Positions 8,333 through 56,325 are shown, counted from the first letter of the stretch. The stretch: DNA of 64,000 nt from Callorhinchus milii (GCF_018977255.1 NW_024704771.1:3906001-3970000); one strand, 5' to 3'. Translations and numbers: made by a program. The notes: generated from the letters alone by a model not told the origin.

Positions 8333-8357
8333 NNNNNNNNNNNNNNNNNNNNNNNNN
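8333..8357. other. Assembly gap (25 N); other gaps at 37814-37995, 45218-45242, 51042-51218 and 51407-51594
   Basis: Runs of N. Confidence 1.
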
Positions 8358-20975: not shown

Positions 20976-21577
20976 AGGCCATGAGGGGTCTGTTCACCAA
21001 CATCAGGACTGTCCATGGTAGGTCTCGGGGATAAAACAGAACTAAGTTGCTGTGACGGTTTACTGTGTGGGTCAGTGTGTATCCTCGTGGGCGGGTTTCA
21101 CCGCTCCTTTATCCGCGGAGCGCTGATGTTCAGCCTGGGAGCGAGTGTAGCCCCTGACTGTACAGGTTCTCTACTCTCCAAGGCCTCTGTTAGAATATGT
21201 CAAACCTTGTTTTAAATTAAACGGTTTGTGGTGAAGAAAATGCCTCCAATTGTTGTGTTGTCCTCGCGAGCGAGAGGACCCGGGTTCGAGTCCACAGACA
21301 GAGCAAAACCTTAGGCAAGTTAACTTACTCCGCACCACACGCCTCTGTTTATCCAACAGCTCATAGGAATCCAGTTGTTAAGTCGATTGGTGGATTTTTT
21401 AATCACATCTTCAGCCGGTCTTGAAGTGAATTGACCATATATTTTGTTAGTAAAACGCGGCTGCCAATTGTGCACACCAGTGTGGGTTGAGTGACTAAAT
21501 TATTATTACTTTTTATTTGTTAGGATTCTTACCCCCGGAAGAAGAATCTTCCAATCGAATTACAACCCGTTTCCTAC

Positions 21578-37100: not shown

Positions 37101-38085
37101 CTGCGGAGTTGGGGAGGCCGACTAGTAAAGAGCTTTGCATAGTCAAGCCTCGCTGTAAGGAAAGCCTGTATGAGGCTTTCGGGGACCTGCGGTGTGACAC
37201 TGTGGTGGAGCCGCGCGATTTTGCAGAAGTGTGGAAAAGGCAGAGCGGGTTATGGCACAGATTTGTGGTAGAAAGGATAGTTGAGGGTCAAACAAGGTGC
37301 CAAGGTTCCGGACTGGAGACACCAACAAAACCAACAACAAAATTGCATTTGTAAAGCCCCTTTTACGTCGGGAGGACTTCGCAAAGCGCTGGATAGTTTT
37401 GGACCCGAGCTGGGGTGGGGGGGGAGGGGGGGGGTCGGAGTGGGGGAGAGGAGGAGGGCAGTGGGGGGGGGGAAGCAGGGAGATCGAAAGCCCGGTCGAA
37501 GAGGAGGGTCTTGAGTAGGCAGAAGGTCCGCCCAATTAGTGGGGCTACATCAGAGATGTGTGGAATAAGGAAATCCGGCTAAGGCTTGACCCCGGCCAAG
37601 AATCAACCCCGGGTCCACTCGCTTGCGAGGCGAGTGCGTTAACCACGGCGCTCCGAGACTCCGCAACCTTCCGACTCAAGAGGCGAGAGAGTGCGACCAC
37701 CTGAGCCAGACTGACCGACCCACCCACCCACTCAACCAACCAACCAACCAATCAATCAACCAACCAACCAATCAATCAACTAATCAAGCAATCAATCTAT
37801 CTATCTATCAACCNNNNNNNNNNNNNNNNNNNNNNNNNNNNNNNNNNNNNNNNNNNNNNNNNNNNNNNNNNNNNNNNNNNNNNNNNNNNNNNNNNNNNNN
37901 NNNNNNNNNNNNNNNNNNNNNNNNNNNNNNNNNNNNNNNNNNNNNNNNNNNNNNNNNNNNNNNNNNNNNNNNNNNNNNNNNNNNNNNNNNNNNNNCTAAC
38001 CAACCAATCAACCAACCAATCAATCCTTGTAGGAATTACTATTGGTCCATTTGGAAAACGTATTGGTTGTGGGGGGGGGAACAAG

Positions 38086-38117
38086 CCCCGCCTCCCTCCC
38101 CAAGTTGGCGCATGCGC
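38086..38117 (+). promoter_or_regulatory. Candidate promoter of butyrophilin-like gene 2 (GC box plus NRF1 site)
   Basis: CCCCGCCTCC at 38086-38095 and the palindrome GCGCATGCGC at 38108-38117, about 420 nt upstream of the acceptor (38532) of the ATG-containing exon. Confidence 0.45.
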
Positions 38118-38605
38118 AGCAGTCTATTTCCGCGTTCAGAGCTGCAAGTGACCTGTGGCTTAGAAGGAGCTCCTCCTCAACACGTCCTCCTCACTGCAAG
38201 ATCAGGGCCATCACCCCCCATCACCACCAGCACCACCACCTCCACCACCACCACTCTCTCTGGGTCTCTCACAAGCCCATGAACATGTTTGTGTGTGTGG
38301 GTCCCACCAGTCAGGACAACCCAATGAGGAAATAGCACAACCCAGAAAACTGGGTGGACTTTGATGCTTTCTGTGAGTAGATGACTTGGCTTGAAAGCGA
38401 AACGGCTGTGGGTCTGCGATAAGCTCAGACAGACGATCATACGCCACCGTGTCCCACCAAGTTGTGGATGGAGTGACTAATTTATTATTTGGCGGTGTGC
38501 AATGTAAACTCTGGGTTCCTTGTTTCTTACAGCTTTACCGCAGAGAGTAGTAGCTCTCTGGTACCTGTTCAGACTAAAAATCCCACCAGCAAAGCTTTGG
38601 GGTCA

Positions 38606-41600
38606 ATGGATCCGAAGTTCTACTTTCTGATGTTCCTTCGGTCGATGCCTTCAGCCTTTGGTAAGAAAAAGAACTCCGCCTTTTCTGACTTGCATGCGTT
38701 TTGTCTGTCCAGCTACATTCAGGTGAGATGTTTGAAACCAGGGTCCCAACTGCCCGGAAACAAATCAAATGTTCACCAGAGGCTAGCATTTATTAATAAA
38801 TACATTAATAAATATCTGGTAAATATCATTACCAGGGATGAGGGACTTCAGCTATGTGGAGAGACGAGAGAAGCTGGGATTGTTCTCCTTAGACCAGAGC
38901 GGGTTGAGGGGAGATTTAATAGAGGTGCTCAAAATTACGAGGGATTTTGATAAAGTAAATTAAGAGAAACTGCTTCCCGTGGCGGGTTGGTAACCAGAGG
39001 ACACAGATTTAAGACGATTGGCGAAAGAACCAGAGGGGAGGCGAAGAGAAGCATAAATTATGAGAACAGGTTGCATAAACGTGGTCAGTATTCCCTTGAG
39101 TTTAGAAAGTTGAGGCGTGATCCAATTGAGGTTTTTTAAAACAATTCAGAAGGGCAGTTACAGAGAAACTATTTCCTCTGATGGGGGAATCCAGAACAAG
39201 GGGGCATCTTCTTAAAATGAGAGCTAGGCCATTTAGGGATGGAATTAGAACATGATATCTCAGGATACAGTGCATAGTTTGGGACACAACATGTCAAGTG
39301 ACTGCCAGGAAGGCAACCTAGATGGACCTTGGTCTTCTTTTGTCTAGCAAATTCTTATCTTCTTATATTAGGACCCAAAGGGTATTGGAAATTTGGAACT
39401 CTCTTCCCCCCCAAAAAAAGTGGTGGATGCTGGATCCGTTCACATTTTCAAAACTGTCGGATATTGAGGGAAACGGGAGCAAAGACGGGTAATTGGACTT
39501 GAGGGACAGATCAGTCGTAATCTTGTAGAATGGCGGAAAAGGTTCGAGGGGCTGAATGGCCTCCTCATGTAGCTACGCTTCCAGTTTCCTACTTACTGCA
39601 AGATAAACACAGGCATGTGTAGGAAGTAAGGAAACCTGCCTAAGGTTTTGCCCCGACCGGGAATCGAACCCGGATCCTCTCGCTTGCTGACCACTACACT
39701 AACGGGCTTCTCTGGTTGTGGATTCCCTAGGCTTCATCGTGAGAACGCCGGAGAACGCGGTGGTGGGCATTGTTGGGGGACAGGTTGTGTTGGACTGCCA
39801 GCTGGTGCCGGCTGAGCTACCGGCCAACGTGGAGGTGCGGTGGAACAGATTAAAGTTGGGGGAACCCGTCCATCTGTACAGAGAAGGGAAGGACCAGCCC
39901 ACGCTGCAAGATCTCAGCTATGCCCACAGGACGGAACTGTACAAATCGCAGTTCAGGAATGGCAACGTGTCCCTGTTGATTAAGCAGCTGACGGTGCAGG
40001 ACGAAGGGGTCTACAGCTGTCAAGTAGCTTCCGGTCAAGAGAGAAAAGATAATAAAGTCATGCTGAAGATCGCAGGTGACGGAAAGCTCCCTCTGCCAGT
40101 GCCTGTCCACTGGCTCCCTATTGCCAAACAAATCGATTTCAAGTTCCTGGCCAACCGTCCCCCAAACTAAACCGTTCGCTCACTCCATGACTGTCAGCGC
40201 GACAGTGCTGCGGTGCAGACCAGACCGGCTGCAGGTTTCACCCACAAAACACACAGTCACTACACTCACCGGTAAATCCTGTCAAGCGCTGCGAGATGTC
40301 CAGGCAACGTGATAAGGCACTGGATGCGGAGCCCTGTAGCAGCGGGTTGGTTAGAGCACTCTCCTCGCAAGCGAGAGGACCCGGGTTCGGTTCCCGGGTG
40401 GGGCGAAAGTTTCCGTACCCCGCACGCCTCGGTTTGCCTAACGCTAAGTAGGAACCCGGTTGTTAGTCGAATGCTTTCTGGGGGTAAAAACCTCTCTCCC
40501 CCCCCCCGAAAAAAAATGGTCACTGAATCCACAACTGGGACACCGCTGCGCGCGATCGGCTGCCGAGTTTCGCTCACAGTCGATCCGCCGCGAAGCGCTT
40601 TTGAGACGTCCCGACGACGTGACGGGGCGCGATACCAAATGCCGGGCTGCCCGGAAAGAGTTAACTGGCTGCAGCAAAGCTGCTCAGAGCAATGACCGAC
40701 CGGGAGTGGATTACACGGGTCTGGGAACCTGCTTAACCTGCCCAGGTTCAGTCACGTCAGGACTGTACCAAGAGTGGGCCAGTAGGGGATCTGTGGCGTG
40801 TCTCGCCTTGGCCCAGAGCCCGATGAGTCTCTCCGACCCTGAGCCCAGCCCCGGAGCGAGCAGACGTGCATGGGGGCAGACGAGAGGGGGTGGGGGGGGG
40901 GGGTGGGGTGGGTGGTGGTGTGGGGGAGCCTGCGAAGGCAGCGATGCATGCGGGTCGACGCCGGGCGAGAGACACCTGCCCGTTCCCCTTCCTGACGCAA
41001 TCGCTGGCTCCCCCAGCTCAGGACACACCTGTGGGAGGTGGGAGGGTCAGGGAGGCACCCGGTAAAGGTGTGTTTGCTGTCAGCAGCCGCCGCGCTCCAC
41101 CGCGGAGTCGGAGGCACCTTTAAGGTCCGGGCGCTCGAATATTTGCTCGGAGCAAACACGAACTCTTTCCAGCTGATTCCTCTGGTTTGGGGGCAGACGT
41201 GGCTGTTTGGAGAGAGAGAGAGAGAGAGAGAGGGAGCGAGAGAGCGAGCGCGCGGGGAACAAGGCAACTTTGCTTCTTCCCACTGGGAGACGACGGGAGG
41301 TTTGGTCTGAACTGGTTTCAAGGTTGGTTCTGCACTTCAGCCGCGGCTTTGGTCTCTTTCTGTTTCTGTCCGAGACTTTCGCCGGGTTCCTCTGGTGCGG
41401 GAGGAGAGGAGGAGGAGGAGGAGGAGGGGGGAAGAGGAGGAGGAGGGGGGGGGGGAGGAGAGGTTGTGTTTGCACGTAGTTCAGGAGCTGTGGATAGAGA
41501 CAGCTCTGACGCGTGAGATATAATAATAATAATAATATTCCTTACTCTCGGTATTTAGCGTCTTATCACATCGTTGAGACACGTTGAAGGGCTTTCCTCT

Positions 41601-41620
41601 CTCTCACTCTCTTTGTATCC

Positions 41621-41651
<31 letters not shown>

Positions 41652-44600
41652 CTACTCTCTGTCCCTTTCTCTCCCCCGGTCTCTCTCTGTCGTTATCTTT
41701 CTCTCTCTCTCTCTCTGTACCTCTTTCTCTCGTCTCTCATTCCCTTCCTCTGCCTTTCTCTGTATCTCTCTCTCTCTCTCTCTCTAATCTTGTCTCTCTC
41801 TTTCTGCGTGAGTGTGCGTCTCTCTCTCTCTCTCTCTCTAATCTTGTCTCTCTCTTTCTGCGTGAGTGTGCGTCTCTCTCTCTCTCTCTCTCTCTAATCT
41901 TGTCTCTCTCTTTCTGCGTGAGTGTGCGTCTCTCTCTCTCTCTCTAATCTTGTCTCTCTCTTTCTGCGTGAGTGTGCGTCTCTCTCTCTCTCTCTCTAAT
42001 CTTGTCTCTCTCTTTCTGCGTGAGTGTGCGTCTCTCTCTCTCTCTCTCTCTCTCTTATTTGGACAATCTCTGGCCAAACCGGTTCGATTTTTTTTCCACC
42101 TCTTCCAACCGATCCGACGCTGAAACGCTTCAAGGCGCCTCAAGCAGTGTAGTGACTGTCCTTCATATCCTCCGCAGCCGTCTGATGCCCTTTAAGAAAA
42201 AAAAAAGGGTGGCGCCGGCTCACGGGTTAAATGGCCTCTCCTATCCCGGGAGCGAACTTTTTACGAAGGTGATAAATTTGGCAATGGAATGACGTATTCC
42301 AGGGCACGCGCTGCTGATGACGGCACGGCCCGGCCCGGCCCGGCCCGGCCCAGCCCGGCCCATCGGCAGGACCCGGAAGGGCCGACCAGTCAACGGCAAC
42401 GGCAACGAGTCATTCCCCCCCCTCGGCTCCGGTTAACCCCTACAAACCAAAAGCCTAACTGTCCCATCTGGAGAATCGGTGGGAAATCAGTGATAGCAAT
42501 GGCAATCTGTGGCTTTAGCCGGTTGGACCCCGGCCGTTACCCCAACGCACGCTCTGGGCTTCCCCCCCTCCACCGCCCACCCCAAGCCTCGGCTCTCGCC
42601 GACCCGTGCTTAATACTCTCCGGAATTAGGTGAGCAGGATGCCTCCCTCCAGGGAGAGAGAGAGAGAGAGCGCACGGAGACTCTTAAGGAACTGTGGCGT
42701 GGATGAGGGGTTAAACTTCTCTCCCCGGTTGCGCCCTGTTCCGGACGTGTGCTCAGATCTCCAGGTCTCCCAGTGCCGTGTAAATGTTGTTGTTGTTGTT
42801 GTCAGAGGGGAAAAGAGAAGGGAGTTTTCCCTCTTCCCCCTCCCCACACACACGCATCACCCCACACACACACGCACCCCACACACGCACCCCCACACAC
42901 GCACACCCACACACACACACACACAGACCCACACGCGTCTCTGTTTATCCAGAACAATCCGAATAATCCTGTGCACAGAATGGCCGCCGAGTTAACCCCT
43001 TCCCCCCCCCCCCTCCCCGGGCCTGTCGTTCCAGCTCCTGGTCCGCCAGTGAGGAAGAGGAGAGGACCGGAGGGGCCGTGACGATGACGGAATCGTGCCG
43101 GGTGTGCGGCGAGCGGCTGCGGGGGAACCGTCGGCGCTGGATCTTCGGCCAGGCGGGGTCGGTGGACCTGCGGGTGGTCCTGTCCCACGTGCTGGCGCGG
43201 GCGGTCCGCAGGGACGGGCGCGGCGAGTTCCTGTGCGGGAAGTGCGTCTTCGTGCTGGAGCGCGTTTACCGCTACGACGCGGTGCTGGCCCGGGTCCAGG
43301 CGCTGTCCATCGAGAGAGTCCAGCGCCTCCTGACGGAGCGGGACAAGCTGTGCGGGGACGTGAGGCGCTCTTACCTCCGGCGCCACCCGCAGGGTTCCGA
43401 GCCCCCCTGGACCGGGCAGGAGACGGCGGCCGACAACGCCGAGCCCCCGCACGTGCCTTACAACCTCCTGCTCCAGGACGACATGGCGCTCAGCTGCTTC
43501 GAGAGCTGGTCGGAGCGCGGCGAGGGGACGCCCCTCGGGCACCGGCCCTGCCGCCACCCGCTCTGTCGCGGCTGCCACGCCCTGCGCGTGCCCGACTCGG
43601 ACTACGAGTCGGTGTGCAAGGTCCCGCGGCGTCTGGCCGGGGGACGGCGGACGCCCCCCTTCCCGCTGTCCCGGGATAAGTCGCGGAGCATGCCGCTGGA
43701 CTGGCTGTTCAGCCCGAAGCGCTCGCGCGCCCACTCGGCGTCGAGCTCCTCGTTCGGGGGGAGAACGAGGAGCGAGGAGGGGGTCTTCGAGGAGGAGGTG
43801 GAGGAGGAGGGGGCGAGTGGGATGCCTGGACGCCCCTCGCCTCCGAGCGCTCGCTCTTCCCGCTCAGCCGGAGTCTCTCCCTCATCGCGTCTCGCCCGCT
43901 CCGCCCTCCGCCCGGCAGCAGAATTCCGGTCCGTCTTCCCAGCGGGGCTTCCTCCCCCCGGGGGGCCGGGACCCCCACCCCAGGGCCGCAGCCCCCCGAC
44001 CCCAGCGAGGACCTGGAGGAGCTCCGTGAGCAGATGGCCGACATGTACCTGCCCCTGAACATGGAGGTGCGTAACCACGGCGACCGCGAGACCTTTCCCT
44101 CCTTTCTCTCGCTCGCTGTCATTCATTGTCAAGTGTAGTGACTGTGTATTTTGCACGGGTCAGATGCACGGTTGCCCCCCCAAAAAATCTGCTCTGGTTA
44201 GTGCGGCATCACATGGCAACTTGTCCCTCTGCTCCACCGGCCGCCACACAGAGACACCTTACCAGTCGTTACCAGGTACCAGGATCAGCTGATTTGAACC
44301 TCCCTGACCCGGGGAAGGCCGAGAGCGAGCAGTCTCACGGCTTCCCCATCCCTGCACGGCCCCAGCGAGGACCTGGTTATTGGCCTTCTCTCTTTGGTTT
44401 CTACCTTTCAGAAGTTCTTGGCGAAGGAGAAAAGGTTTGAGGAGCTGGAGGTGAAGGTCGGACAGCTGAGCGGACGCCTCGAGGTGGCGAGGACCCAAAG
44501 CCGGACGAGGGACTGTGAGCGGGTGAGACCCCGCGAGGCCCTGCCCGCCTGCCCACGCCAACCCCTGGGCTCCCGCCGCGCAGTGGTTAACACGCTCGCT

Positions 44601-47600
44601 CCGCAAGTGAGAGGAAACCGGGTTCAATTCCCGGGCAGGGGACCCTTGCATTGAGACGTCTCAAAGCGCTTCCCAGAATAGACTGTAAAGCGTAGTAGCT
44701 GTGCGTTTTGTGGGTGAAACGTGGGTAATAAATAATCTCTCCCCCCCCCCCCCCAAAAAAAAATGCCCGACTGTCTGTGGGACGCTGCGGTGCGTAATTT
44801 GGCTCCGGTGTTTCGCCCACAAAACACAGTTAATCCACTTTACGGTACACTCTGCGAAGTCTCGACGACCAACGCGAGGGTTGTTATACCCTCCTCCGCC
44901 CCCTGCGCGACGGATGCCCAGCGGGAGACCCACCCTGTACCCCCACCTCAGTGTGTTTCTCCATAGGAGCCCCTTCCCCGAGAGCCAGGGGCCCCACCAG
45001 GCGACCCCGGGCCCCGGCGTGAAGGGAGGGCGAGAGTCCGTCTGCTCCAGGAGCTGCTCAACAAGGAACAGTTACTGCAGGTGATGGTGATGGGGGGGAA
45101 AGGGAGTGTTGGTCTCTCGCTCTCACTCTGTGTCTCTCGTTCTCTCACTTTCTCTCTCTCCACGTTGCACTTTCTGTTTCTCGCTCGTTCTCTCACTCTC
45201 TCTCTCTCTCTCTCTCTNNNNNNNNNNNNNNNNNNNNNNNNNTCTCACTCGCTTTCAAATCCCTTCACCCTCTGGCATCCACCTACCTCTCTGAGCTGCT
45301 TTCTCCCCACTCTACTTCCCGTTGCCTCCACCTCGACTGGCTCCGGCCCCCTGCTTGTCCCTCCGTTTCACTCATCGGTGACCAGGCTTTCAGCCACTAC
45401 GCCCCAAAACTCTGGAACACTCTTCCTCTATCCCTCCCCCCTCGCCCCTTCCTTCTCCATCTTCATGTCGTGCCTGAAGACCTTCCTCTTCGACCATATC
45501 TACGGTCACCTCCCCCCCGCCCATCTCGGTGTCGTGCTCCTCCACTTTCAAGCGCTTTGGGACGCTGCCCTGGATGAGGGACGCTACATAAATGCAAGTT
45601 GTTATTTCAACAAAATTACGTTTATACGACGCCTTTCACGTCGGGAGGACAACCCAAGGAGCTGTAGTTAAGGATTTTCGCCCAAGCTGGGGTTTCGGAT
45701 CAGGAGGGGTGGAGGGCAGGGAGTGTGAGGGTGGAAGGGTGATTTTGGTTAAGCTTGGACGCCTCTTAAGCCGGACAAAATGGCCAATACGTTCTGCTTA
45801 ACAGTCTTCCACTGTGTGATAAAATCCACGTGTGTTAATCATCAGCTGTTGGCCTGAATCCCGTGATCCAGTTGACTGGCCACAGAGGCTCGATGGTGGA
45901 GCTGGGGTGCACGTCTAAGGGCTGGTACCCAGAACCGAAGGTGATGTGGCTGGACGGACACAAGGAGGAGTTGCGGAAACGAGAAGTGACGGAAAATAAG
46001 GTGGAGATGAAAAGGATGGAGTTTTATGAAGTGAACAGCAGTGCTGTGGTGATGCAGGACAGTCAAAACATATTCTCCTGTGTCATTCGCAACGATCTCC
46101 TGAATTCAATGAAAGGCGTCACCGTCCAGATATCAGGTCTGTTATAAATCCGTGTGCAGTTTTGGTCTCCTCATTTAAGGAAGGATGTACTTGCCTTGGA
46201 GGGGGTGCAACGTAGATTTACTCGGTTAGTACCAGGGATGAAGGGGATGAGTTACAAGGATAGGTTGACCAATTTGGGCCTATACTCTCTAGAATATAGA
46301 AGAATTAGAGGGGATCTTATAGAAACCTATAAGATCATCAAAGGCCATGATAGAGTAGAGAGTGGGAGATTGTTTCCCCAATTGGAGAGACTAAAACCAG
46401 GGGTCACAACCTTAAAATCAGAGGCAGCCCTTTTTCAATGAGTTGAGGAAGAACTTCTTCACTCAAAGGGCGGCGAATGTATGGAACTCACTACCCCAAA
46501 GGGCTGTTGACGCTCAGTCCTTGAACATATTCAAGACTGAGATAGATAGATTTCTTATTGCTGAAGGGATTAAGGGATATGGGGATAAGGCGGCGTCAGG
46601 TTATTAGCTGGAGTTAGATTAGAAGATCAGCCATGATTGAATGACGGGGCAGAGGCTCGAAGGGTTGAATGGCCTCCTCCTGCTCCTATATGTTATCTTA
46701 TAAATCAATCCCTTTATTTTTAGCTGTAATCTCGCTGCAACTTCAGGCCCATTTGGCCAAGTTATTATCTCGCTTATCCTCCCGCCTCCCCCTCCCACAT
46801 AATTCTCACAAGTGGAGTCCTGTAACCCAGTGGTTAGAGCACTCGCCTCGAAAGCGAGAGGACCTGGGTTCAATTCCCAGTCAGGGCGAAACCTAGGCAA
46901 GTTTCCTTCCTCCACACACACACACACGACTCTGTCGGCCTAGCAGGAGTTAGGAACCCGGTTGTTAGTCGATTGGCGGATCGCTTTACCGTAATAATCC
47001 CTCCAAAAAAAATCCCAAATACGGTCACTCGATCCACATCTCTGACGTAGCCCCGTTTGTGGGACGTTTCTGTGCGAAATTGGCTGCCGGGTTTGGCCCA
47101 CAAAATACGCAGTCACTCCACTTGAAGCTGTGATACGCGCAATATCAAATGCAAAGATTATTACTGTATAATGTTATTCATCGCTCCCCTCCTCCCCTCT
47201 CTACAGGACAGTTCTTCCCCAGTGTCTGCGGCTGGCTCTCGGCATTCTGGGTTATTTTCGTGCTCTTCCTGTTAGTGATTCTGCTCGCGGTGTACTTGCT
47301 GTGGAGACTCAGAAAATTGGTCTCGGTTAACAAAGGTAAGTCTGGAGCTTGGGGATTTAGGCCAAGGTTCGAGCCCGACTGGAGAACTGGGGGCGAAATG
47401 GGGTTGGGGTGGTGCCAAGAGCGTCTCGAGCTCATAGTCTAGGCTGATGAGATGAGACGTGAAACCTCGCTCTCCATCTGTGCCCGTTCAGGCGGGTGTG
47501 GAGTCCTGTAGCGTAGTGGTTAGAGCGAGAATACCTTGGCAAGTTTCCACACTTCTGTCTACCTAGCAGTAACAACGACAGCAATTTGCATTTATATGGT

Positions 47601-49787
47601 GCCCTTCCCCGCCCGCGGTAGCTTCCCGGAGTGCTTGACAGTGACGGAGTCTGACCTCGAGGGAGGGAGGGAGGGAGGGAAGGAGGAAGGTGACCATAAG
47701 CTCGATCCAAAAAAGGAAGGTCTTTAGGCGGGGGGGCATTGAGGGAGAAAGTGGCTGAAGGCGGAGGAGGGGACGAGGGATGAATAGGAGCCGAGCGGAA
47801 GCAGTGGGTGGGGGAGTGGGGGTAAGTGGGCGCCCAGTTGTTAGTTGATTGGTGTTTTATACCCATGATTGACAGACACGTCTTGTTTTTCAGAGCTGAA
47901 AAAGAGACCTTCTGTAAACGGTAAGTTAAGATCACTCCCCCTCCCCTTTAATGTCAGGTCTCGGAAACCTCCAAGCAATCACCCATCTAGACCGTATCTT
48001 ACCGTATCTCGCCATCTTCCTGGTGGGGGGAGGTAAGCGGGGTTTCCTGTGAGCCGAACTGGCTCTAGGGTGACACACTTGGCAAGGGAATGTCAGAATC
48101 CAGCCAGGCCAGGCCTCTGTGGAGGTCTCTAGTCTGGTTCCAGAGCCTGGAGGGTCCACAGTATTCCAGGGCACTCACTGCTGATGACACCACAGCCCGG
48201 CCTGGCTCATCGGCTCATCTGGAAGGGCCGACCAGTCAGGGAATCATCCCACTCAGCTCCTGTTAACCCTGCAAGCCGAAGCCCCAACAGGTCGGGTGGT
48301 CCTGGCTGGACGAGCAGCGGGAAAGGCTGGCCAGACAGCGATATCAGTTGGTTAGGCTCGAGCAGTTACCCCAACACACATGCTGGGCTTTCCCCACCCC
48401 CACCCCCCAAGCCTTGGCTCTCCAACCCGTGCCTAATACTCTCCGGAATTGGGTCAGAAGGATGCCTCCCTCCAGGGTCAGAGTGCGGATTCCGTTCCAA
48501 CACTCTGTCGCTGGGATTTCCAGGTGTAGTGGGAAGCCTGGAACTTCTCAGCTTGGTTTGGAGACTCTTAAGCAACGGTGACGGGTTTCCGCGTGTGTCA
48601 GACACCCGACTGACCCCGAAATAAATAGCTGGTTAGACTCCAGCTCATTAACAGGCTCTGGGGTCCCCAAGCTGTGGTCACCTGTGGTTTAAGCTACTCC
48701 ACTCTAGTGGGGAAACAAAAAGCACCCAACTTCGGTCTTCATAATTGCTAACAATATTTCTTTTGAATCTCTTTTGCCTCTATCAGAATATGAAGAGCTG
48801 CAGCGTAAACTGGGTGAGTAACCAAAGCAGCGCAAGGGATCTGAGGCACTGCCCCGTGCGAACAGCTCAATGTAAATGCAAGTTGTAATAATAATAATAC
48901 TCCTTATCGCATTTTTTTCTGGACGGGATCTGAGCCATTGCTATGCTCCCGGTTCTATACAGATGGATAAAAACGTAAGTTCGGCCGGACGAACCGCCTC
49001 GTTGCAGCCGTGCTCTAACCTCTGTGCTACGGGACTCCCAACAAGTACTCGTTGTCCGTCCGAAAACGTCCAGCTTTAATTTCTGGCCAGAATCAAATCA
49101 AACGAGCGACGCAATGTGGTCCTTGGGACGTCCTCCCGACGTGAAAGGCGCTCTATAAGTGGAATCTTGTTGTTGTTGTTGTTGAAACCTGCGTGTTTTT
49201 AACTGGTTAGACTCCAGCAGTCATCACAACAACAACTTGCATTTATGCGGAGCGTCTCGGAGCACTTAACTGACGGAGCTTGACACCGAGTTGGGTTGAG
49301 AGGGGGGCGGGGAGGGGAGGGGAGATGGCCGTAATCATGGTCGAAGAGGAAGGTCTTCAGGTTTGATCTGAAGACCGGCAAGCAGGAGACGAGGCTGAGG
49401 GATTGAGGCAGGGATTGAGTTTGGGGGCGGAGTGGCTGCTGATGGAGGAGCAGAAAGCGCGAGCGGCACGGAGGAGGCCGGAGTCGGTCTACTTCTGGGC
49501 AAAGGCCGGGGGTATTGGAGTGGGGAGTAACCAGGTCGGAGAGGTGGGGAGGTGCCAGGGGGTGAAATGAGTTCCACCCATACAACGCACACTCTGGTGT
49601 TCCCCCACCCCAACCCCCCATTCACCGCACCACCACCCCACCGCCCGCCCGCCCGACCTCCAGCCTTGGTATTCGTCAATTTGTGCCTAATACTGTCCAG
49701 AATTCGGCAATGAGTGTGTCACTGTGAAGCAATTTAACTGTTATCTCTTTCCCTTGACAGAGAAAGAGCGGGCGGAGTCAGACCAAG
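38606..49787 (+). CDS. Butyrophilin-like gene 2 (signal peptide, IgV, IgC, TM, three 27-nt heptad exons; 3' end not found)
   Basis: Signal exon 38606-38660 (MDPKFYFLMFLRSMPSAF); IgV 39731-40075 (VVLDCQL...VRW...PVHLYREGKDQ...YAHRTEL...GNVSLLIKQLTVQDEGVYSC); IgC 45846-46136 (ELGCTSKGWYPEPKVMW...FSCVIRNDLL); TM 47207-47335; heptad exons 47894-47920, 48787-48813 and 49761-49787. All phase 1 with canonical GT-AG. The IgV-to-IgC link spans another gene's exons and an N gap. Confidence 0.82.
38830..39570 (+). mobile_element. CR1 LINE 3' fragments
   Basis: Two degenerate CR1 ORF2 C-terminal pieces and a CR1 3' UTR (GAGGGGCTGAATGGCCTCCTC). Confidence 0.7.
41595..42055 (+). repeat. (CT)n-rich tract with a compound ~50-55 bp unit (CTAATCTTGTCTCTCTCTTTCTGCGTGAGTGTGCG) x5
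   Basis: Direct reading of the sequence. Confidence 0.9.
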
Positions 49788-50692
49788 GTATGTGAGAGCT
49801 TTCATCCCATTAACATCACGTTAACCTACAGCTTTTTAACCTACCACCTAAGTGGGGTTTCCTTGGGGTTGAACTGACCCCCCAAGGTAACATGTTTGGC
49901 AACAGAACGTCAGCGTCGAGCCAGGCCTCTCCGTCGCGGTCTCCAGTCCGGTTTCCTGAACAGGATGCATCCCCTCCATGGAGACAGAGGGTGGATTCCA
50001 TTCCAACTATCTATCTCTGGGATTCCTGAGTGTACTAAGTGGGATGTATGGAACTCTCCGCTTGATTTGGAGACTCTGAAACACGTGGAAACCCATCACC
50101 GCGCTTCCGACACCCGGCTGAGCAGGAGAAAAAAGCTCAAAGTATTAATAATACCCCTTTGCTCGGGGTTAGCCTGGCTCGGTCACCAACGTCCTCTCGC
50201 CTCCGAGTTAGATGGTTCTGGGTTTCAGCCCCACGTGGGGACTTCGAGCTCACAGTCCAGGCTGAGGCTCCATAACTGCTCTGGGGGGAGCCTCGCATTG
50301 TCAGGAGCGCCGTCCTTTAGATGAGACATTAAACAGGTCCTGTTTGCTGTGCGGTGTTTTCTGTGGAGCGCTTTGAGATGTGAGGAACCTAAGGATTATT
50401 ATTTATTATTATTATTACAGGACTTCAGACGTTGTTGCATCAGCTCTCTCCGTCACTCTCCGTGTCACTCACACGCTCGTTCTGTCTCTTACTCACTCGC
50501 TGCTCTCTCTCTCTGTCCCTCACTCGCTTTCTCTCTCGTCTTTTCTCTCTCTCTCTCTCCCTGTCACACTCTGTTTCTCCCGCACTCATTCTCTCTCTCT
50601 TACTGCGTCTCTCACTCATTTTCTCTCACTCTCTGTATCTCTCTCTCACGCCCACGCTCTGTCTCTCACTCTACGTCTCTTTCACTCACTCA

Positions 50693-50738
<46 letters not shown>

Positions 50739-53700
50739 GTCGCTCCCACTCCTTCTCTCCTACTCACTCTGTCTCTCACTCTTTCTGTGTCACTCGCTCT
50801 CTGTCACTCACTCATTTTCTCTCTCACCCTATACCCCTCGGGTCTCTCGCTCGCTCGCACCGGCTCTCGTGTGACAGCCGTGTGTACAGGCTGTGTGCGC
50901 GCGTGTGTGTGCGTGTGTGTGTGTGTCAGCGTCGCTCACACCGGCCCCGTGTGACAGCCGTGTGTACAGGCTGTGTGCACGCGTGTGTGTGCGTGTGTGT
51001 GTGTGTCAGCGTCGCTCACACCGGCCCCGTGTGACAGCCGTNNNNNNNNNNNNNNNNNNNNNNNNNNNNNNNNNNNNNNNNNNNNNNNNNNNNNNNNNNN
51101 NNNNNNNNNNNNNNNNNNNNNNNNNNNNNNNNNNNNNNNNNNNNNNNNNNNNNNNNNNNNNNNNNNNNNNNNNNNNNNNNNNNNNNNNNNNNNNNNNNNN
51201 NNNNNNNNNNNNNNNNNNCACCAGACTGACTCGCGGAGACCGTTCCCCAGAGGCTGTGACCGATGATCTGGTGGAGAAGCTGCGAGAGAGGTTGAAGGAA
51301 CGGGAAGCGGCACTGGAGGTGAAGGGGGGTCCTCAAGCCTCTCCCTCACGCGTGTCTCTGACCCACTTGTCTGTGTGTGTGTGTGTGTGTGTGCGTTTGT
51401 CTCCCCNNNNNNNNNNNNNNNNNNNNNNNNNNNNNNNNNNNNNNNNNNNNNNNNNNNNNNNNNNNNNNNNNNNNNNNNNNNNNNNNNNNNNNNNNNNNNN
51501 NNNNNNNNNNNNNNNNNNNNNNNNNNNNNNNNNNNNNNNNNNNNNNNNNNNNNNNNNNNNNNNNNNNNNNNNNNNNNNNNNNNNNNNNNNNNNNACTGTA
51601 TGTGTGTGACTGTGCGTATGTGTGCGTGACCTGCTGTGTGCGTGACTGTGTGTGTATGTAAGACCTACTGTGTGTGTGACTGTGTGTGTGTGTGTGTGCG
51701 TGTGCGCGCGCGCGTGTGATCTGCTGTGTGCGTGACTGTGTGTGTGTGTGTGTGTGAGAGAGAGACCTACTGTGCCTGTGTGTATGTGACTCGCTGTGTG
51801 TGTGTGACTCACTGTGTGTATGGTGCGTGACTGTGTGTGTCTGTGTGTGTGTGTGTGAGACCCGCTGTGTGCGACTGTATGTGTGTGACTGTGCGTATGT
51901 ATGTATGTATGTATGTATGTATGTATGTATGTGTGCGTGACCCGCTGCGTGTCCGTGTCCGTCTTTCTCTCGCGCAGAGAGCTGCTGATGACAGGTTCGC
52001 TGCTCTGGAGGAGAAGGAGGCAGAGACTCGGAGGTTGCGGGCGGCGCTGAGGGACGTGGAGTGTGATGTGAGCCGCCTCAGCCTGGTCCTCGCTCACAAC
52101 CAGCAAATGATTAACGTGAGGAGCCGTGCGCCGTGCGTGTGCGTGCGTGCGTGTTTGCGTGCGTGTTTGCGTGCGCGTGCGTCAGGGGCACTTTGAGCTC
52201 GCAGTCCAGGCTGATGCTCCAGTGCGGCGCTGGGGGGGGGGGTGAGGAGGGGGAGAGGAAGAACAGCTTTGTCAGAGGTGCCGCCCTTCGGACGAGAACT
52301 TAAGCCTCACTCCCCATCTGCGGCGAAGTCGCTGTGCGCGGACCGTCTGCCCGCAAAGACGCGCAGTCACCGCACTTTGCACGGAAAACCCGGCGAAGCG
52401 CTTCGAGACGCCCCCCTCCCGAGGCTGGTTCCGGGCGAATCGCGTCGCCTGTTACCTGAGCAGTAGGCAGGAGCTCGCTCGGCCGATCGCTTTCCGATCG
52501 GGGTTAATGATAAATGATCAATAAATAATAATAATAATTTGCTCTCTCAATCCACGGCCGTTCGTGGGACGCCGCTGCGGGCGATCGGCTGCCGCGTTTG
52601 GCCCACACGATACGCAGTCAGGTCACTCGACGGTGTATTCTGCGAAGCGCTTTGAGACGTCGCGACGAGGTGATAAATCTGAGCCCCCTCTCACCCCCCC
52701 CCCCCAACACCCGCCCTCCATCTCTCACTCTCTCTCTCTCTCTCTCTCTCACACCAGCTGCTGAATCAGACGCTGTCTCAGAAGACGTCTGTCCTGAGCC
52801 AGACCGAGACGCTGTGTAAGGCGGTGGCTCAGACGGCTCGGGAGGTGGACGGGAACCGGACGGCGGCCCTGAGGGAGAAGGACGCCATTATCGCCCGCCT
52901 GCAGGAGGCGCTGGAGAGCAGAGGCAGGGACGTGGCGGTACGGCCAACGCAGTTACAGGAGGAGGCCATTCAGTCCCTCGAGCCTGTTCCGCCATTCTAT
53001 ACGATCATTGTTAATCTGCACCTCAACTCCAACTCCTGTCGCTGCCTTTTGCCCCATATCCCTTGATCCCCCGACCTGACAAAACTCTTATCGACCTCAG
53101 TCTCTCTCCCTCTCGCGCTGTGTTGCTCCCTCAACCGTGTGTTTTTTCTCAGTGTTTCTCTCTCTCTCTCTCTCACACCCCCTCACTCCCCAATCCACCA
53201 CCCGGCACCTCCGCTCGACTGGCGCCGGCCGTCCTGCTCGTCCCTCGCGCCCTCCGCCCCACCATTGGATTCAGCAGCTACGCCCCGAAACTCTGGAACT
53301 CTCTCCCTCAATCCCTCCTCCTCCTCCTCCTCCTCCTCCTCCTCTCTGCGCCCTCACTCCCTCTTTTTAACTCACCCCTGAAAACGTTCCTTTTCGACCG
53401 TCACCCACACCCACCCCCAACCAACTCAACCCACCCCAACCGCCAGCTCGGAGTCAGGCTCCGCCACTGTGGAGTCCTGTAGCTCAGTGGTTAGAGCACT
53501 CGCTTTGCAAGTGAGAGACCTGAGTTCAGTTCCAGGCAGAGGGCCAAACCTTGGGCAAGTTTCCTTACCCCACACAGAGCCGAATAATAATCCCTCCAAA
53601 ACCCCAAACAATAATAAATTGGTCATTTTCAATCTGCGACTGTTTGTGGGACATCGCTGTGCGCCATCGGCTGCCGCGATCCCCCACAAATATACAGTCA

Positions 53701-54328
53701 ATTCGCTTTACAGTGTGTTCTGTGAAGCGCTTTGGGACGTCCTCTCCCGACGTGAAAAGCGCTATATCAAATGCGAGGATTATTATTATTATTATTATTA
53801 AGTGCTCTGAGACATTGTCGTTGTGTGTTTCTCTTTCACTATTGTGTTTCTCTCTTGTGCTGTTTCTTTCTCCCTCACTATCTCACTGCTTTTCTGTCAC
53901 GCGCTGTTTCTCTCACTGTGTGTCTCTGTTTCAGTTGCTTTCACGTTCTCGCTCTCCGATTCTCTCTCACTGACGCTCTCTCACTCTGTTTCTCTCACAC
54001 AGTCTCTCACTGATTTTCTCTGTGTGTGTGTGTGTCTCTCTCTGACTCTCTCTCCCTGATATGTCTCTCGCTCTCTCTCTCTCTCTCTCTGATTTTCTCT
54101 CTCTGTCTCTCTCTCTCTCTGTCTGACAGGCACTGACAGACTCGGTGCTGGGTCGGGGTCTGAGCGGGGCACCTGACGTCTCGGACAGTCTGCGTGCGAG
54201 TCTGAAGGACAAGGAGAGTTTGCTGAGCCGGTGTCTGGAGGAGCAGAAACAGAGGAGCAACGAGCACCAGGCACAGGTGGAGGGGATGCTCAACACCATC
54301 GCACACAAGGAGCAGAGAATCCAGGTAT

Positions 54329-54359
<31 letters not shown>

Positions 54360-56325
54360 CGGGGACGGGGACGGGGGGGAGAGAGAGAGACGAACAGGCG
54401 GGCGGAGAGAGGGAAGCAGACAGAGAGAGGGAGGTGGACAGAGAGAGGGAGTCTCAGACTATATAGAGGTGCTCACTGTTAATATCAGATTATATAGAAG
54501 TGTCACTGTTAATATCAGACTATATAGAGGTCTCACTGTTAATTTCAGACTATATAAAGGTGCTCACTGTTAATTTCAGACAAAATAGAGGTGTCACTGT
54601 TAATACCAGACTATATAGAGGTGCTCACTGTTAATATCAGACTATATAGAGGTGCTCACTGTTAATATCGGACTATATAGAGGTGCTCACTGTTAATATC
54701 AGACTATATAGAGGTGCTCACTGTTAATATCAGACTATATAGAGGTGCTCACTGTTAATATCAGACTATATAGAGGTGTTCACTGTTAATATCAGACTAT
54801 ATAGAGGTGTCACTGTTAATATCAGACTATATAGAGGTGCTCACTGTTAATATCAGACTATATAGAGGTGTCACTGTTAATTTCAGACTATATAGAGGTG
54901 TCACTGTTAATATCAGACAAAATAGAGGTGTCACTGTTAATATCAGACTATATAGAGGTGTCACTGTTAATATCAGACTATATAGAGGTGTCACTGTTAA
55001 TTTCAGACAAAATAGAGGTGTCACTGTTAATTTCAGACTGTATAGAGGTGTCACTGTTAATACCAGACTATATAGAGGTGCTCACTGTTAATATCGGACT
55101 ATATAGAGGTGTCACTGTTACTACCAGACTATATGGAGGTGTCGTTAATATCAGACTATATGGAGGTGTCGTTAATATCAGACTATATGGAGGTGTCGCT
55201 GCCACTGTTGTCATTGTGTCCCCTGTTCCCCTCCTGCAGAAGCTGACCGAGCTGTACAGTCAGACACAGGCTGCCCGTGAACAGGAAGCGCAGGCTCTAA
55301 CACAGCGTCTGGCCGACAGGGAGCAGGAGATGGAGGGTCGAGCCCGGGCCGAGTCCATCACAGCCCAGGAGCGCCGTGCTGAGCGGGCGCAGCTCCAGGC
55401 ATTGCTGGACAACGAACACCAAACGGTTCTGGTGAGGCTTGTGACCGTTGGTTGAGGCTGTGAAGTGTATTAATTGTGCGGTGTCTCTCCGGTGACTGCC
55501 GTTAATCCCCCCCCCCCCCCCCCACCCCCCCCCCGTCTGTGCCCCACTCGCACGGCTGTTAAAGATCTCTGCGGCGCTGCTCGGGGGGGAAAAAAAGCTC
55601 TCCCGCTCGTCTCCTGTCCGGCAATCGACCAGATAACATGTCTGTTTGTAGGGAAGTGGTTGCTCAAATGCAATTGAGCTTCTGCTTTCACCCACCAAAC
55701 TCACAGTCACTGCACCTGGCTGCAAATTCCGTGCCGCGCTTCAATGGCGATGCTGTTTCAGAGCACTCGCCTCGCAAGCCGGAGGACCCAGTTCAATTCC
55801 CCGGGCGGGCTGAAACCTTAGGCAGGTTGTCTTACTCCGCGCGCCTCTGTTTTTTCTCAGCAATAAGTCGGAAACCGGGTTGTTAGTGGATTGGCGGATC
55901 GCTTTCCGGGGGGGGGGGGTAATAATTCCTTAAACAAAATGGGGTCGCTCAATCCGCGACTGTTTGCGCGACGCCGCTCCGCGCACTTGACTGCCCACGG
56001 TCGGTCCACTTTGCAATATATTCCGCGAAGAGCTTTGAGACATCTCGAAGACGCGATAAGGCAATATTGCTGTGCCATATGCAAGGATCATTATTATTAT
56101 TATTTGCCTGGGGTCTGGGAGCAGGAATTCTGGCTGTTTTTTCCCCTCGCTTACCCTGGAATTTAGCCTCAAACCCCTCCCTTGCGGCCGCCACGTGATA
56201 CTTTTCTCCGACTGACGCAGGATCTGTTGGACGCTTCGCAAGAGAAAGATCGCCTCCTCTCCAGACTTCAGGAGCAGCTGCAAGACAACATGAGGCTGAA
56301 ACTGACCATGAAGCAGACCCTTTGA
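43084..56325 (+). CDS. Myomegalin/PDE4DIP-family coiled-coil protein of the short SMYLE (MMG8) type; one frameshift in exon 1 as assembled
   Basis: Exon 1 43084-44066 (MTESCRVCGERLRGNRRRWIF...DGRGEFLCGKCVFVLERVYRYD...CRGCHALRVPDSDYESVCKVPR; ends MADMYLPLNME after a frame change near 43809-43813). Further exons: 44412-44522, 44967-45080 (LLNKEQLLQ), (gap)-51318 (LVEKLRERLKEREAALE), 51978-52115 (RAADDRFAALEEKE), 52758-52937, 54130-54324, 55240-55431 and 56221-56325 (MKQTL*). All phase 0. Motifs are collinear with the alternative N-terminus and coiled coil of human myomegalin as recalled. Confidence 0.85.
46150..46695 (+). mobile_element. CR1 LINE 3' end
   Basis: QFWSPHLRKDVLALEGVQRRFTRLVPGMKGMSYKDRLTNLGLYSLEYRRIRGDLIETYKI plus 3' UTR GATCAGCCATGATTGAATGACGGGGCAGAGGCTCGAAGGGTTGAATGGCCTCCTCCTGCTCC. 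Confidence 0.9.
46816..47170 (+). mobile_element. tRNA-derived SINE
   Basis: Head GGAGTCCTGTAACCCAGTGGTTAGAGCACTCGCC through to the ATCAAATGCAAAGATTATT tail. Confidence 0.8.
50190..50415 (+). mobile_element. Deu-domain SINE (SacSINE1/AmnSINE-like) remnant
   Basis: CTCGCCTCCGAGTTAGATGGTTCTGGGTTTCAG...TCCAGGCTGA...GCATTGTCAGGAGCGCCGTCCTTTAGATGAGACATTAAAC resembles the DeuSINE head and core. Related remnants lie at about 11480-11580, 33600-33700 (-), 52190-52300 and 60200-60400. Confidence 0.6.
50440..51041 (+). repeat. (CT)-rich low-complexity tract followed by an 80 bp tandem repeat running into an N gap
   Basis: GTGTGACAGCCGTGTGTACAGG unit starts at 50869, 50949 and 51029. Confidence 0.9.
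53471..53798 (+). mobile_element. tRNA-derived SINE, young subfamily copy
   Basis: GGAGTCCTGTAGCTCAGTGGTTAGAGCACTCGCTTTGCAAG head; L2-like tail GAAGCGCTTTGGGACGTCC...CGACGTGAAAAGCGCTATATCAAATGC plus (ATT)n. Confidence 0.85.
54451..55198 (+). repeat. Minisatellite, 30-31 bp unit GTCACTGTTAATATCAGACTATATAGAGGT, about 24 copies
   Basis: Direct tandem array without spacers in the intron between myomegalin-like exons at 54324 and 55240. Confidence 0.95.

What the first reader, a model, noticed from the sequence alone, without database searches (positions are those of the whole stretch)
38606..56325. Butyrophilin and myomegalin-like exons interleaved on the same strand: real architecture or a repeat-driven block swap
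Seen: the order is BTN signal+IgV (38606-40075), myomegalin-like exons 1-3 (43084-45080), BTN IgC/TM/3 heptads (45846-49787), then myomegalin-like exons 4-9 (~51219-56325). Each gene sits partly inside an intron of the other. Myomegalin-like exon 3 (..KEQLLQ) and exon 4 (..LVEKLRERLKE..) are adjacent segments in human myomegalin as recalled. All myomegalin-like introns are phase 0 and all BTN introns phase 1, so cross-splicing would shift frame. Same-strand interleaving of two multi-exon genes is very rare in vertebrates. Caveat seen in the sequence: three (CT)n tracts (41595-42055, 45186-45242 with a gap, 50440-50860) form an A-R-B-R-C-R-D layout. Swapping blocks B (42060-45185) and C (45243-50440) makes both genes contiguous, which is a classic assembly ambiguity. 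Misassembly is therefore at least as likely as true interleaving.
Basis: partly seen in the sequence, partly recalled or inferred. Interest (0 to 1): 0.8.

Follow-up and report, generated by a model that had tools for sequence, protein, structure and literature searches.

The report
Two shark genes apparently interleaved
In this elephant-shark draft assembly a butyrophilin-like immune gene and a small myomegalin-related gene appear to have interleaved exons, but a transposon cut in two at the block edges and unread gaps at the decisive joins make a misplaced 5.8-kb contig the likelier cause.

Summary
Window = Callorhinchus milii. A BTN-like gene (7 exons, all phase 1) and a 9-exon gene (all phase 0) lie in the stated order. 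The second gene is not myomegalin itself. It is the ortholog of zebrafish si:ch73-95l15.5 (zf-AD-like + SMYLE_N, about 680 aa).

Corrections:
- Exon 4 starts under the 51042-51218 gap.
- The "heptads" are 27-nt exons.
- Cross-splicing would add stop codons, not shift the frame.
- The three CT tracts are only 65-74% alike, with at most 25 shared exact bases, so they cannot drive an assembler swap.

New evidence: a SINE-like element is split. Its head ends at 40148, 73 bp after the IgV exon. The first base after the 25-N gap (45243) continues it at the same element position. So IgV and IgC were once about 680 bp apart, and 40149-45217 (promoter plus exons 1-3) sits between the halves.

The join at 40148/40149 is gap-free. 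The two joins specific to the interleaved order both fall in gaps. Two sharks have the 9-exon gene followed by the same TRIM gene, with no BTN exon inside.

Estimated likelihoods: misplaced contig (deletion allele or partial duplicate) about 0.45; real interleaving about 0.3. Long reads or three PCRs would decide.

The parts
38606..38660 (+). BTN-like exon 1 (ATG, leader), donor phase 1
   Evidence: ATG...TTTG|GTAAGA
39731..40075 (+). BTN-like IgV exon, phase 1-1, 345 nt
   Evidence: V-set 7.6e-13; 100% identical to UniRef A0A4W3JJ90_CALMI
40106..40148 (+). Head piece of a SINE-like element (model positions 154-196), cut off at its 3' side
   Evidence: nhmmer E 8.7e-06; no remainder of the element follows 40148
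40149..45217 (+). 5.1-kb block lying between the two halves of the split element. Contents: SINE pieces, R1, CpG-rich promoter, and exons 1-3 of the SMYLE_N gene. It ends in a CT run.
41597..42055 (+). R1: CT-rich tract with a 54-bp tandem array (41765-42051). It lies inside the block, not at its edge.
43084..44066 (+). SMYLE_N-gene exon 1: ATG, zf-AD-like CxxC...CxxC, SMYLE_N domain, SRIP motif at 43917-43928. Frameshift in a G5 run at 43807-43811.
44412..44522 (+). SMYLE_N-gene exon 2, 111 nt, phase 0
   Evidence: aligns to shark orthologs
44967..45080 (+). SMYLE_N-gene exon 3, 114 nt, phase 0, ends ...KEQLLQ
45113..45217 (+). R2: CT-rich tract at the end of the left contig
45218..45242 (.). 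25-N gap. It hides the join between the block and contig Y.
45243..45606 (+). Rest of the same SINE-like element (model positions 196-539), starting at the first base after the gap
   Evidence: E 6.7e-59. The joined flanks align as one hit over positions 154-539, 227.8 bits.
45243..51041 (+). Contig Y, bounded by gaps on both sides. It carries the IgC, TM and three 27-nt exons, then R3 and an 80-bp tandem repeat.
45846..46136 (+). BTN-like IgC exon, 291 nt, phase 1-1
   Evidence: C2-set_3 3.4e-20
47207..47335 (+). BTN-like transmembrane exon, 129 nt, phase 1-1
   Evidence: hydrophobic run WLSAFWVIFVLFLLVILLAVYLLW
47894..47920 (+). 27-nt cytoplasmic mini-exon 1
   Evidence: matches the ELFLRPTSV-type exon of the Hypanus BTN
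48787..48813 (+). 27-nt cytoplasmic mini-exon 2 (EYEELQRKL)
49761..49787 (+). 27-nt cytoplasmic mini-exon 3 (EKERAESDQ). No further BTN exon follows.
50467..50825 (+). R3: CT-rich tract
51042..51218 (.). 177-N gap. It hides the join between contig Y and the exon-4 piece, and the 5' end of exon 4.
51220..51318 (+). Readable part of SMYLE_N-gene exon 4 (33 codons). It lies on a 188-bp piece between two gaps.
51407..51594 (.). 188-N gap in intron 4, TG-rich on both flanks
51978..52115 (+). SMYLE_N-gene exon 5
52758..52937 (+). SMYLE_N-gene exon 6
54130..54324 (+). SMYLE_N-gene exon 7
55240..55431 (+). SMYLE_N-gene exon 8
56221..56325 (+). SMYLE_N-gene exon 9, stop at 56323-56325. Same C-terminus (...TMKQTL) as the shark orthologs.

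Best explanation
The interleaving is most likely not the true layout of the functional genes. Shown: both genes are real. Inferred: in the ancestral order, probably still present in the sequenced animal, they lie in tandem on one strand. That order is BTN-like leader, IgV, an intron of about 680 bp holding one SINE-like element, IgC, TM, three 27-nt exons, and then the upstream region and 9 exons of the SMYLE_N gene, followed by a TRIM gene. The sequenced DNA also held a second version in which the IgV side is joined at 40148/40149 directly to the SMYLE_N gene's upstream region. This could be a deletion allele lacking about 5.8 kb, or a partial duplicate of the BTN 5' end. The assembler built that shorter join into one contig. 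The piece it lacks, contig Y (45243-51041), could then not be put back inside a finished contig, so the scaffolder parked it in the next gap, which lies in intron 3 of the SMYLE_N gene. That produces the pattern IgV / e1-3 / IgC-TM-mini-exons / e4-9.
For: 1. Split element. Model positions 154-196 end at 40148, and positions 196-539 begin at 45243, the first base after the gap. Joining the two flanks gives one continuous alignment (227.8 bits against 18.2 + 193.5 for the separate pieces) with a single extra base. Eleven other copies run straight through position 196.
2. The two joins that exist only in the interleaved order (block to Y, and Y to exon 4) are exactly the two covered by N. The join expected under this explanation (40148/40149) is gap-free.
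3. Contig Y starts within 1-3 bp of the breakpoint and shows no CT run, although the other side of the 25-N gap ends in (CT)11. The gaps at 37814 and 51407, by contrast, have the same microsatellite on both flanks.
4. Without the block, BTN intron 2 is about 676 bp. The paralog on the minus strand has about 855 bp.
5. Every exon of both genes has strong splice sites. Read in the other gene's phase, they contain stop codons. A fixed interleaving would therefore damage both mRNAs. Same-strand overlaps are selected against (PMC2330155).
6. Heptranchias perlo and Carcharodon carcharias have the same 9-exon gene followed by the same TRIM gene. Neither has a BTN exon inside the gene or within 10 kb upstream.
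Against: - No independent copy of this genome could be reached, so the order was not observed directly.
- The gap lengths (25 N, then 177 + 188 N around a 188-bp piece), if they are true mate-pair estimates, fit the assembled order. They would be violated if Y belonged 5 kb upstream.
- An overlap assembler would normally leave some IgV-side sequence at the left end of Y. None is there.
- One other copy of the element (16554-16318) also begins near position 192, so the chance of a coincidental abutment is about 1-3%, not negligible.
- The BTN-like gene lacks further mini-exons and a B30.2 exon under either order.
Confidence: 0.45

Rival explanations
1. The assembled order is real and single-copy. 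A 5.1-kb block carrying the SMYLE_N gene's upstream region, promoter and exons 1-3 was moved into a SINE-like element in BTN intron 2. This could have been a duplicative insertion followed by loss of the original copy together with the BTN 3' end. The two genes are then truly interleaved on one strand and each must splice over the other's exons.
For: - The 40148/40149 join is in gap-free, non-repetitive sequence, at a place where an assembler has no reason to make a false join.
- Gap sizes of 25 and about 550 bp suggest that mate pairs place Y snugly between its neighbours.
- The tail of Y shares more non-trivial 9-10-mers with the TG-rich sequence around exon 4 than with any of 304 other windows. 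This is weak, low-complexity evidence.
- The CT tracts cannot explain a false swap.
- The missing BTN 3' end is explained by the second step.
- Same-strand embedded and partly overlapping gene pairs do exist: 30 and 33 pairs in human (PMC2330155).
Against: - The two joins specific to this order are unread.
- Y begins exactly at the breakpoint.
- All 5 BTN exons inside intron 3, and exons 2-3 inside BTN intron 2, keep strong splice sites and would introduce stop codons if included.
- The layout is absent in two sharks.
- It needs at least two events.
Confidence: 0.3
2. The 5.1-kb block exists twice. One copy was inserted into BTN intron 2. The original copy still sits in front of exon 4. The draft assembly collapsed the two near-identical copies into one. 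The working SMYLE_N gene is then contiguous, and the BTN gene merely hosts a partial duplicate in an intron.
For: - The split element fits a duplicative insertion.
- The left contig ends, and Y begins, at the right edge of the block, as expected at a fork.
- Exon 4's 5' end and the rest of intron 3 are missing from the assembly.
- The frameshift in exon 1 could belong to a decaying copy.
Against: - The gap between Y and exon 4 is given as 177 N, not 5 kb or more.
- No diverged second copy or remnant is seen in the window.
- An assembler usually flags a 5-kb unit at double depth as a repeat.
Confidence: 0.12
3. One reading: a repeat-driven swap of 42060-45185 with 45243-50440, caused by three interchangeable (CT)n tracts.
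For: - CT-rich tracts of 100 bp or more are rare elsewhere in the window: none in 1-36000.
- One of them ends at the 25-N gap.
Against: - The tracts are 65-74% alike, and the longest shared exact run is 22-25 bp.
- R1 and R3 are read through without a gap.
- The split element puts the left edge at 40148, not in R1, so this swap would leave the element broken.
Confidence: 0.04

Closest known systems
si:ch73-95l15.5 orthologs ('SMYLE_N domain-containing protein'), e.g. Heptranchias perlo and Carcharodon carcharias, 708 and 733 aa
   Same: - N-terminal CxxC...CxxC (zf-AD-like) and SMYLE_N domain
- SxIP-type motif (SRIP here, SKIP in the sharks)
- Coiled-coil rest and the same C-terminus ...TMKQTL
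- 9 coding exons, with a TRIM gene just downstream
- 41-44% identity over 100% of the model
   Different: - Here intron 3 as assembled is 6.1 kb and holds five BTN exons. In the sharks it is about 1.0-1.4 kb and empty.
- Exon 1 has a frameshift in a G run.
- Exon 4 is partly unread.
Myomegalin (PDE4DIP), including its MMG8/SMYLE form (1116 aa; PMC13678657)
   Same: Shares the SMYLE_N domain (Pfam PF18615, 1.3e-18). Frog myomegalin matches the N-terminal 28% of the model at 47% identity.
   Different: About 680 aa with its own stop codon. No CM1 or other myomegalin domain was hit in the ten open-frame pieces scanned, which did not include the exon 4 or exon 9 pieces. It is a separate, older paralog that sits next to TRIM, BTN and MHC-type genes.
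Butyrophilins of cartilaginous fish (Hypanus sabinus BTN2A1-like, Heptranchias perlo BTN1A1-like)
   Same: Leader, IgV, butyrophilin-type IgC, TM and 27-nt cytoplasmic exons, all phase 1. 38-39% identity over 94-96% of the model.
   Different: Only 3 mini-exons and no PRY/SPRY exon. The relatives have about 6 mini-exons and a B30.2 domain.
Same-strand embedded or partly overlapping protein-coding gene pairs (PMC2330155)
   Same: As assembled, two same-strand genes share introns without sharing exons.
   Different: Here two of the three defining joins are unread. Known pairs are under-represented and mostly not conserved.
Allele-specific or duplicate contigs parked beside their true site in diploid draft assemblies (general knowledge, not tested here)
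   Same: A contig bounded by gaps on both sides whose edge coincides with a structural breakpoint, next to a gap-free 'short' version of the site.
   Different: Read depth and mate pairs, which define such cases, could not be examined.

Membership tests
Butyrophilin (BTN/BTNL) | Signal peptide plus IgV domain | tested here: met
   V-set 7.6e-13; leader exon, phase 1
Butyrophilin (BTN/BTNL) | Butyrophilin-type IgC domain | tested here: met
   PF22705 C2-set_3, 3.4e-20, above the cut-off
Butyrophilin (BTN/BTNL) | Single TM followed by a run of very short in-phase cytoplasmic exons | tested here: met
   129-nt TM exon and three 27-nt exons, all phase 1, matching the Hypanus protein
Butyrophilin (BTN/BTNL) | C-terminal B30.2 (PRY/SPRY) domain | tested here: not met
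   the only PRY on the + strand (63858-64000) belongs to a TRIM gene with its own RING, B-box and coiled coil
Myomegalin / PDE4DIP proper | SMYLE_N (EB1-binding N-terminal) region | tested here: met
   PF18615, 1.3e-18
Myomegalin / PDE4DIP proper | Long protein (over 1100 aa) with CM1 and further myomegalin domains | tested here: not met
   no such Pfam hit in the scanned pieces (exons 4 and 9 not scanned). The stop at 56325 matches the C-terminus of the 680-790-aa orthologs.
si:ch73-95l15.5 orthogroup | zf-AD-like N-terminus plus SMYLE_N, length about 680-790 aa, full-length similarity | tested here: met
   147 hits; sharks at 41-44% identity with 100% coverage. zf-AD scores 27.6 bits, just under the cut-off of 28.
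si:ch73-95l15.5 orthogroup | Same 9-exon structure and the same downstream neighbour | tested here: met
   9 tblastn blocks in L001 and L003; TRIM RING/B-box 5-6 kb downstream there, 3 kb here
True same-strand interleaved gene pair | All joins between alternating blocks read in continuous sequence | tested here: not met
   only 40148/40149 is gap-free. The other two joins lie under N.
True same-strand interleaved gene pair | Same layout in related species | tested here: not met
   absent in two elasmobranchs. No second holocephalan was available.
True same-strand interleaved gene pair | Independent reads or transcripts that span the layout | not testable with these tools
   no independent C. 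milii record could be reached

The most novel reading that the evidence does not exclude
Two intact multi-exon protein-coding genes are truly interleaved on one strand in the elephant shark. The layout would have arisen when a 5.1-kb block (promoter plus exons 1-3 of a conserved SMYLE_N gene) landed inside a SINE in intron 2 of a butyrophilin-like gene. Each gene would then have to skip the other's strong, out-of-phase exons.
Probability: 0.28. Interest if true: 0.65.

Novelty: not a real feature. Interest (0 to 1): 0.3.

Why it matters
If the order is an artefact, the locus is a clear worked example. A transposon split across a gap reveals where a floating contig belongs, and gene models built on this assembly are truncated for that reason. 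The Ensembl 174-aa BTN fragment and the NCBI 373-aa LOC103190625 model are both affected.

Either way, the join at 40148/40149 points to a real structural variant or duplicate in a BTN/TRIM immune-gene neighbourhood.

If the order is real, it would be a rare natural test of how the splicing machinery keeps two same-strand genes apart when each carries the other's strong exons in its introns.

The work also identifies the second gene. It is a conserved, unstudied paralog of myomegalin with conserved linkage to a TRIM gene across about 400 million years.

Tried and rejected
1. I considered the PRY/B30.2 sequence at 63858-64000 as the missing last BTN exon, which would have nested the whole second gene. 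Rejected: a RING/B-box exon (about 59360-59790) and a coiled-coil exon (62399-62640) precede it, and the same TRIM gene follows the ortholog in both sharks.
2. A second pair of element pieces abuts in model coordinates (58281-58191 with 49566-49226). Rejected as chance: 58281-57812 is one complete copy. About 1.2 such pairs are expected among the 94 pairs tested.
3. I looked for remnants of lost duplicate copies: IgC or TM in 40076-43083, and e1-e3 in 49788-51406. None was found.
4. I looked for conserved non-coding sequence upstream of the shark ortholog that might show which block is ancestrally upstream. Only shared transposons were found.
5. I mapped the SINE piece at the block's left edge (40165-40324) to look for a matching head near the end of Y. 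None was found, and 5'-truncated copies are common.
6. I tried to find independent C. milii records. The exact-product look-up of exon 1 found nothing. A homology search with the NCBI model returned only itself. Three isoform look-ups in other species were not on record.
7. Literature: no paper mentions the gene name. One BTN survey lists C. milii but says nothing about this locus.
8. I did not try to read or infer the letters under any N stretch.

Full report
**Source and layout.** The window is Callorhinchus milii: a UniRef entry from that species is 100% identical to the IgV and IgC exons. N stretches lie at 8333-8357, 15788, 37814-37995, 45218-45242, 51042-51218 and 51407-51594. The finding therefore spans four readable pieces:
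- X = 37996-45217
- Y = 45243-51041
- Z = 51219-51406 (188 bp)
- W = 51595 onward

**The butyrophilin-like gene.**
- Pfam gives V-set (7.6e-13) and the butyrophilin Ig-C family C2-set_3 (3.4e-20).
- The best relatives are BTN2A1-like of Hypanus sabinus and BTN1A1-like of Heptranchias perlo, at 38-39% identity over 94-96% of the model.
- Those proteins have about six 9-residue cytoplasmic exons and a PRY/SPRY domain. Here there are three 27-nt exons and nothing more.
- The PRY sequence at 63858-64000 belongs to a TRIM gene whose RING/B-box and coiled-coil exons lie at about 59360-59790 and 62399-62640.

**The second gene.**
- Exon 1 (ATG at 43084) hits Pfam SMYLE_N (1.3e-18) and, just under the cut-off, zf-AD.
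- A 676-aa spliced model finds 147 relatives. Most are named 'uncharacterized protein si:ch73-95l15.5' and are 680-790 aa long. Coverage is 100% and identity 41-44% in sharks.
- The gene is therefore a separate paralog of myomegalin, not myomegalin itself.
- The shark proteins end in ...TMKQTL, as the window's exon 9 does.
- Exon borders were refined. Exon 2 runs to 44522. Exon 1 ends at 44066 and has a frameshift in a G5 run (43807-43811), which the NCBI model XP_007909670 reads through.
- An SxIP-type motif (SRIP, 43917-43928) is conserved with the sharks' SKIP (read from the sequence).

**Gaps, tested first.**
- 45218-45242 is intronic for both genes.
- 51042-51218 removes the acceptor and about six codons of exon 4. 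The readable 33 codons align to residues 407-439 of the Heptranchias protein, whose exon 4 starts at 401. The two visible AGs give phases that do not fit exon 3.
- 51407-51594 is in intron 4, and both flanks are TG-rich.

**The CT tracts.** They exist, and long CT tracts are rare elsewhere in the window. But they are only 65-74% alike, with at most 22-25 identical bases in a row. R1 and R3 are read through without a gap. A repeat-driven swap at these tracts is therefore poorly supported.

**A split transposon.** This is the new evidence.
- A SINE-like element has about 30 pieces in the window. I modelled it from five full copies (547 positions).
- The piece at 40106-40148, starting 31 bp after the IgV exon, covers positions 154-196 and then stops. 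No remainder follows.
- Piece Y opens at its very first base (45243) with positions 196-539.
- Joining the two flanks in a script gives one continuous alignment over positions 154-539, at 227.8 bits, with one extra base at the joint.
- Eleven other copies run straight through position 196.
- Calibration: of 94 same-strand pairs within 10 kb, two abut within 3 positions. The other pair is explained by a complete copy at 58281-57812.
- One more copy starts near position 192, so I put the chance of coincidence at about 1-3%.
- Consequence: the IgV side and the IgC side were once joined, giving an intron of about 676 bp. The minus-strand paralog has about 855 bp. The stretch 40149-45217 lies between the halves. 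It holds SINE pieces, R1, a CpG-rich promoter (GC 72-75%, CpG observed/expected 0.95 at 43000-44000) and exons 1-3.

**What this means for the order.** Of the three joins in the assembled order:
- 40148/40149 is gap-free and lies in non-repetitive sequence, so it is probably real DNA.
- The other two joins, which are the only ones specific to interleaving, both lie under N.
- Y starts exactly at the breakpoint, with no CT run to match the (CT)11 on the other side of the gap. The gaps at 37814 and 51407 show the same microsatellite on both flanks.

This is what one expects if Y is a separately assembled piece whose true place is inside X at 40148/40149. Such a piece arises if the animal carried a shorter version of the site as well, either a deletion allele or a partial duplicate of the BTN 5' end.

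Against this reading: the gap sizes (25 N, then about 550 bp to W) fit the assembled order if they come from mate pairs. The tail of Y also weakly resembles the TG-rich sequence around exon 4.

**Biology.** All internal exons of both genes are multiples of three. Inclusion in the other gene's mRNA would keep the frame but bring in stop codons, in IgC, TM, mini-exon 1, e2 and e3. All of these exons have strong splice sites. A fixed interleaving would therefore be costly. Same-strand overlaps are under-represented in animal genomes but do exist (PMC2330155).

**Comparison.** In Heptranchias perlo (L001) and Carcharodon carcharias (L003):
- The ortholog has the same nine coding blocks.
- Intron 3 is about 1.0-1.4 kb.
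- A TRIM gene follows 5-6 kb downstream.
- No BTN exon lies in the gene or within 10 kb upstream.
- The nearest BTN found in Heptranchias is 1.3 Mb away, next to a PPT2-like gene.

The layout is therefore derived in the chimaera lineage, or it is an artefact.

**Verdict.**

| Reading | Estimated likelihood |
|---|---|
| Misplaced contig Y; functional genes in tandem | about 0.45 |
| True single-copy interleaving | about 0.30 |
| Collapsed second copy of the 5.1-kb block | about 0.12 |
| Other | remainder |

No independent copy of this genome could be reached, so the question stays open until long reads or three simple PCRs are run.

Noticed in passing
window 28094-24413, minus strand: A second, diverged BTN-like gene lies head-to-head with the first. 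IgV is at 27032-26670 (45% identical to the + strand IgV), IgC at 25814-25497, and a TM-like open frame at about 24700-24560. No B30.2 was found.
   Followed up: partly
window 59360-64000, + strand: A TRIM gene: RING and B-box at about 59360-59790, coiled coil at 62399-62640, and a PRY start at 63858 that runs off the window. The same neighbour follows the SMYLE_N gene in two sharks, so the linkage is old.
   Followed up: partly
window 43807-43811: The exon 1 reading frame shifts in a run of five G. The NCBI model XP_007909670 reads through it. This is either a homopolymer read error or a real defect of this copy.
   Followed up: partly
window 54454-55201: A 30-bp tandem array of about 25 copies, 92% alike, in intron 7 of the SMYLE_N gene.
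   Followed up: no
window 41765-42051 and 50851-51041: Two local satellites: a 54-bp unit (5.4 copies, 94% alike) inside R1, and an 80-bp unit (2.4 copies, 96% alike) that runs into the 51042 gap.
   Followed up: no
window 21366-21389, + strand: Part of the N-terminus of the Ensembl-derived BTN fragment (GIQLLSRL) maps here, 18 kb upstream of the IgV exon and inside the span of the minus-strand BTN gene. This suggests a long upstream transcript start or a model artefact.
   Followed up: no
hits P0053 and P0112: In Polypterus and Bagarius the ortholog is annotated as fused to an MHC class I gene and to PPT2 respectively. This hints that the gene is MHC-linked in bony fish too.
   Followed up: no
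whole window: Very high load of one tRNA-like SINE family (94 nhmmer pieces in 64 kb) and of the 'HWLPI' SINE-like element (31 pieces).
   Followed up: partly
window 44584-44610: The NCBI model ends in a small alternative exon (WLTRSLRK, then stop) in intron 2 instead of exon 3. The likely reason is that exon 4's acceptor is unread.
   Followed up: partly
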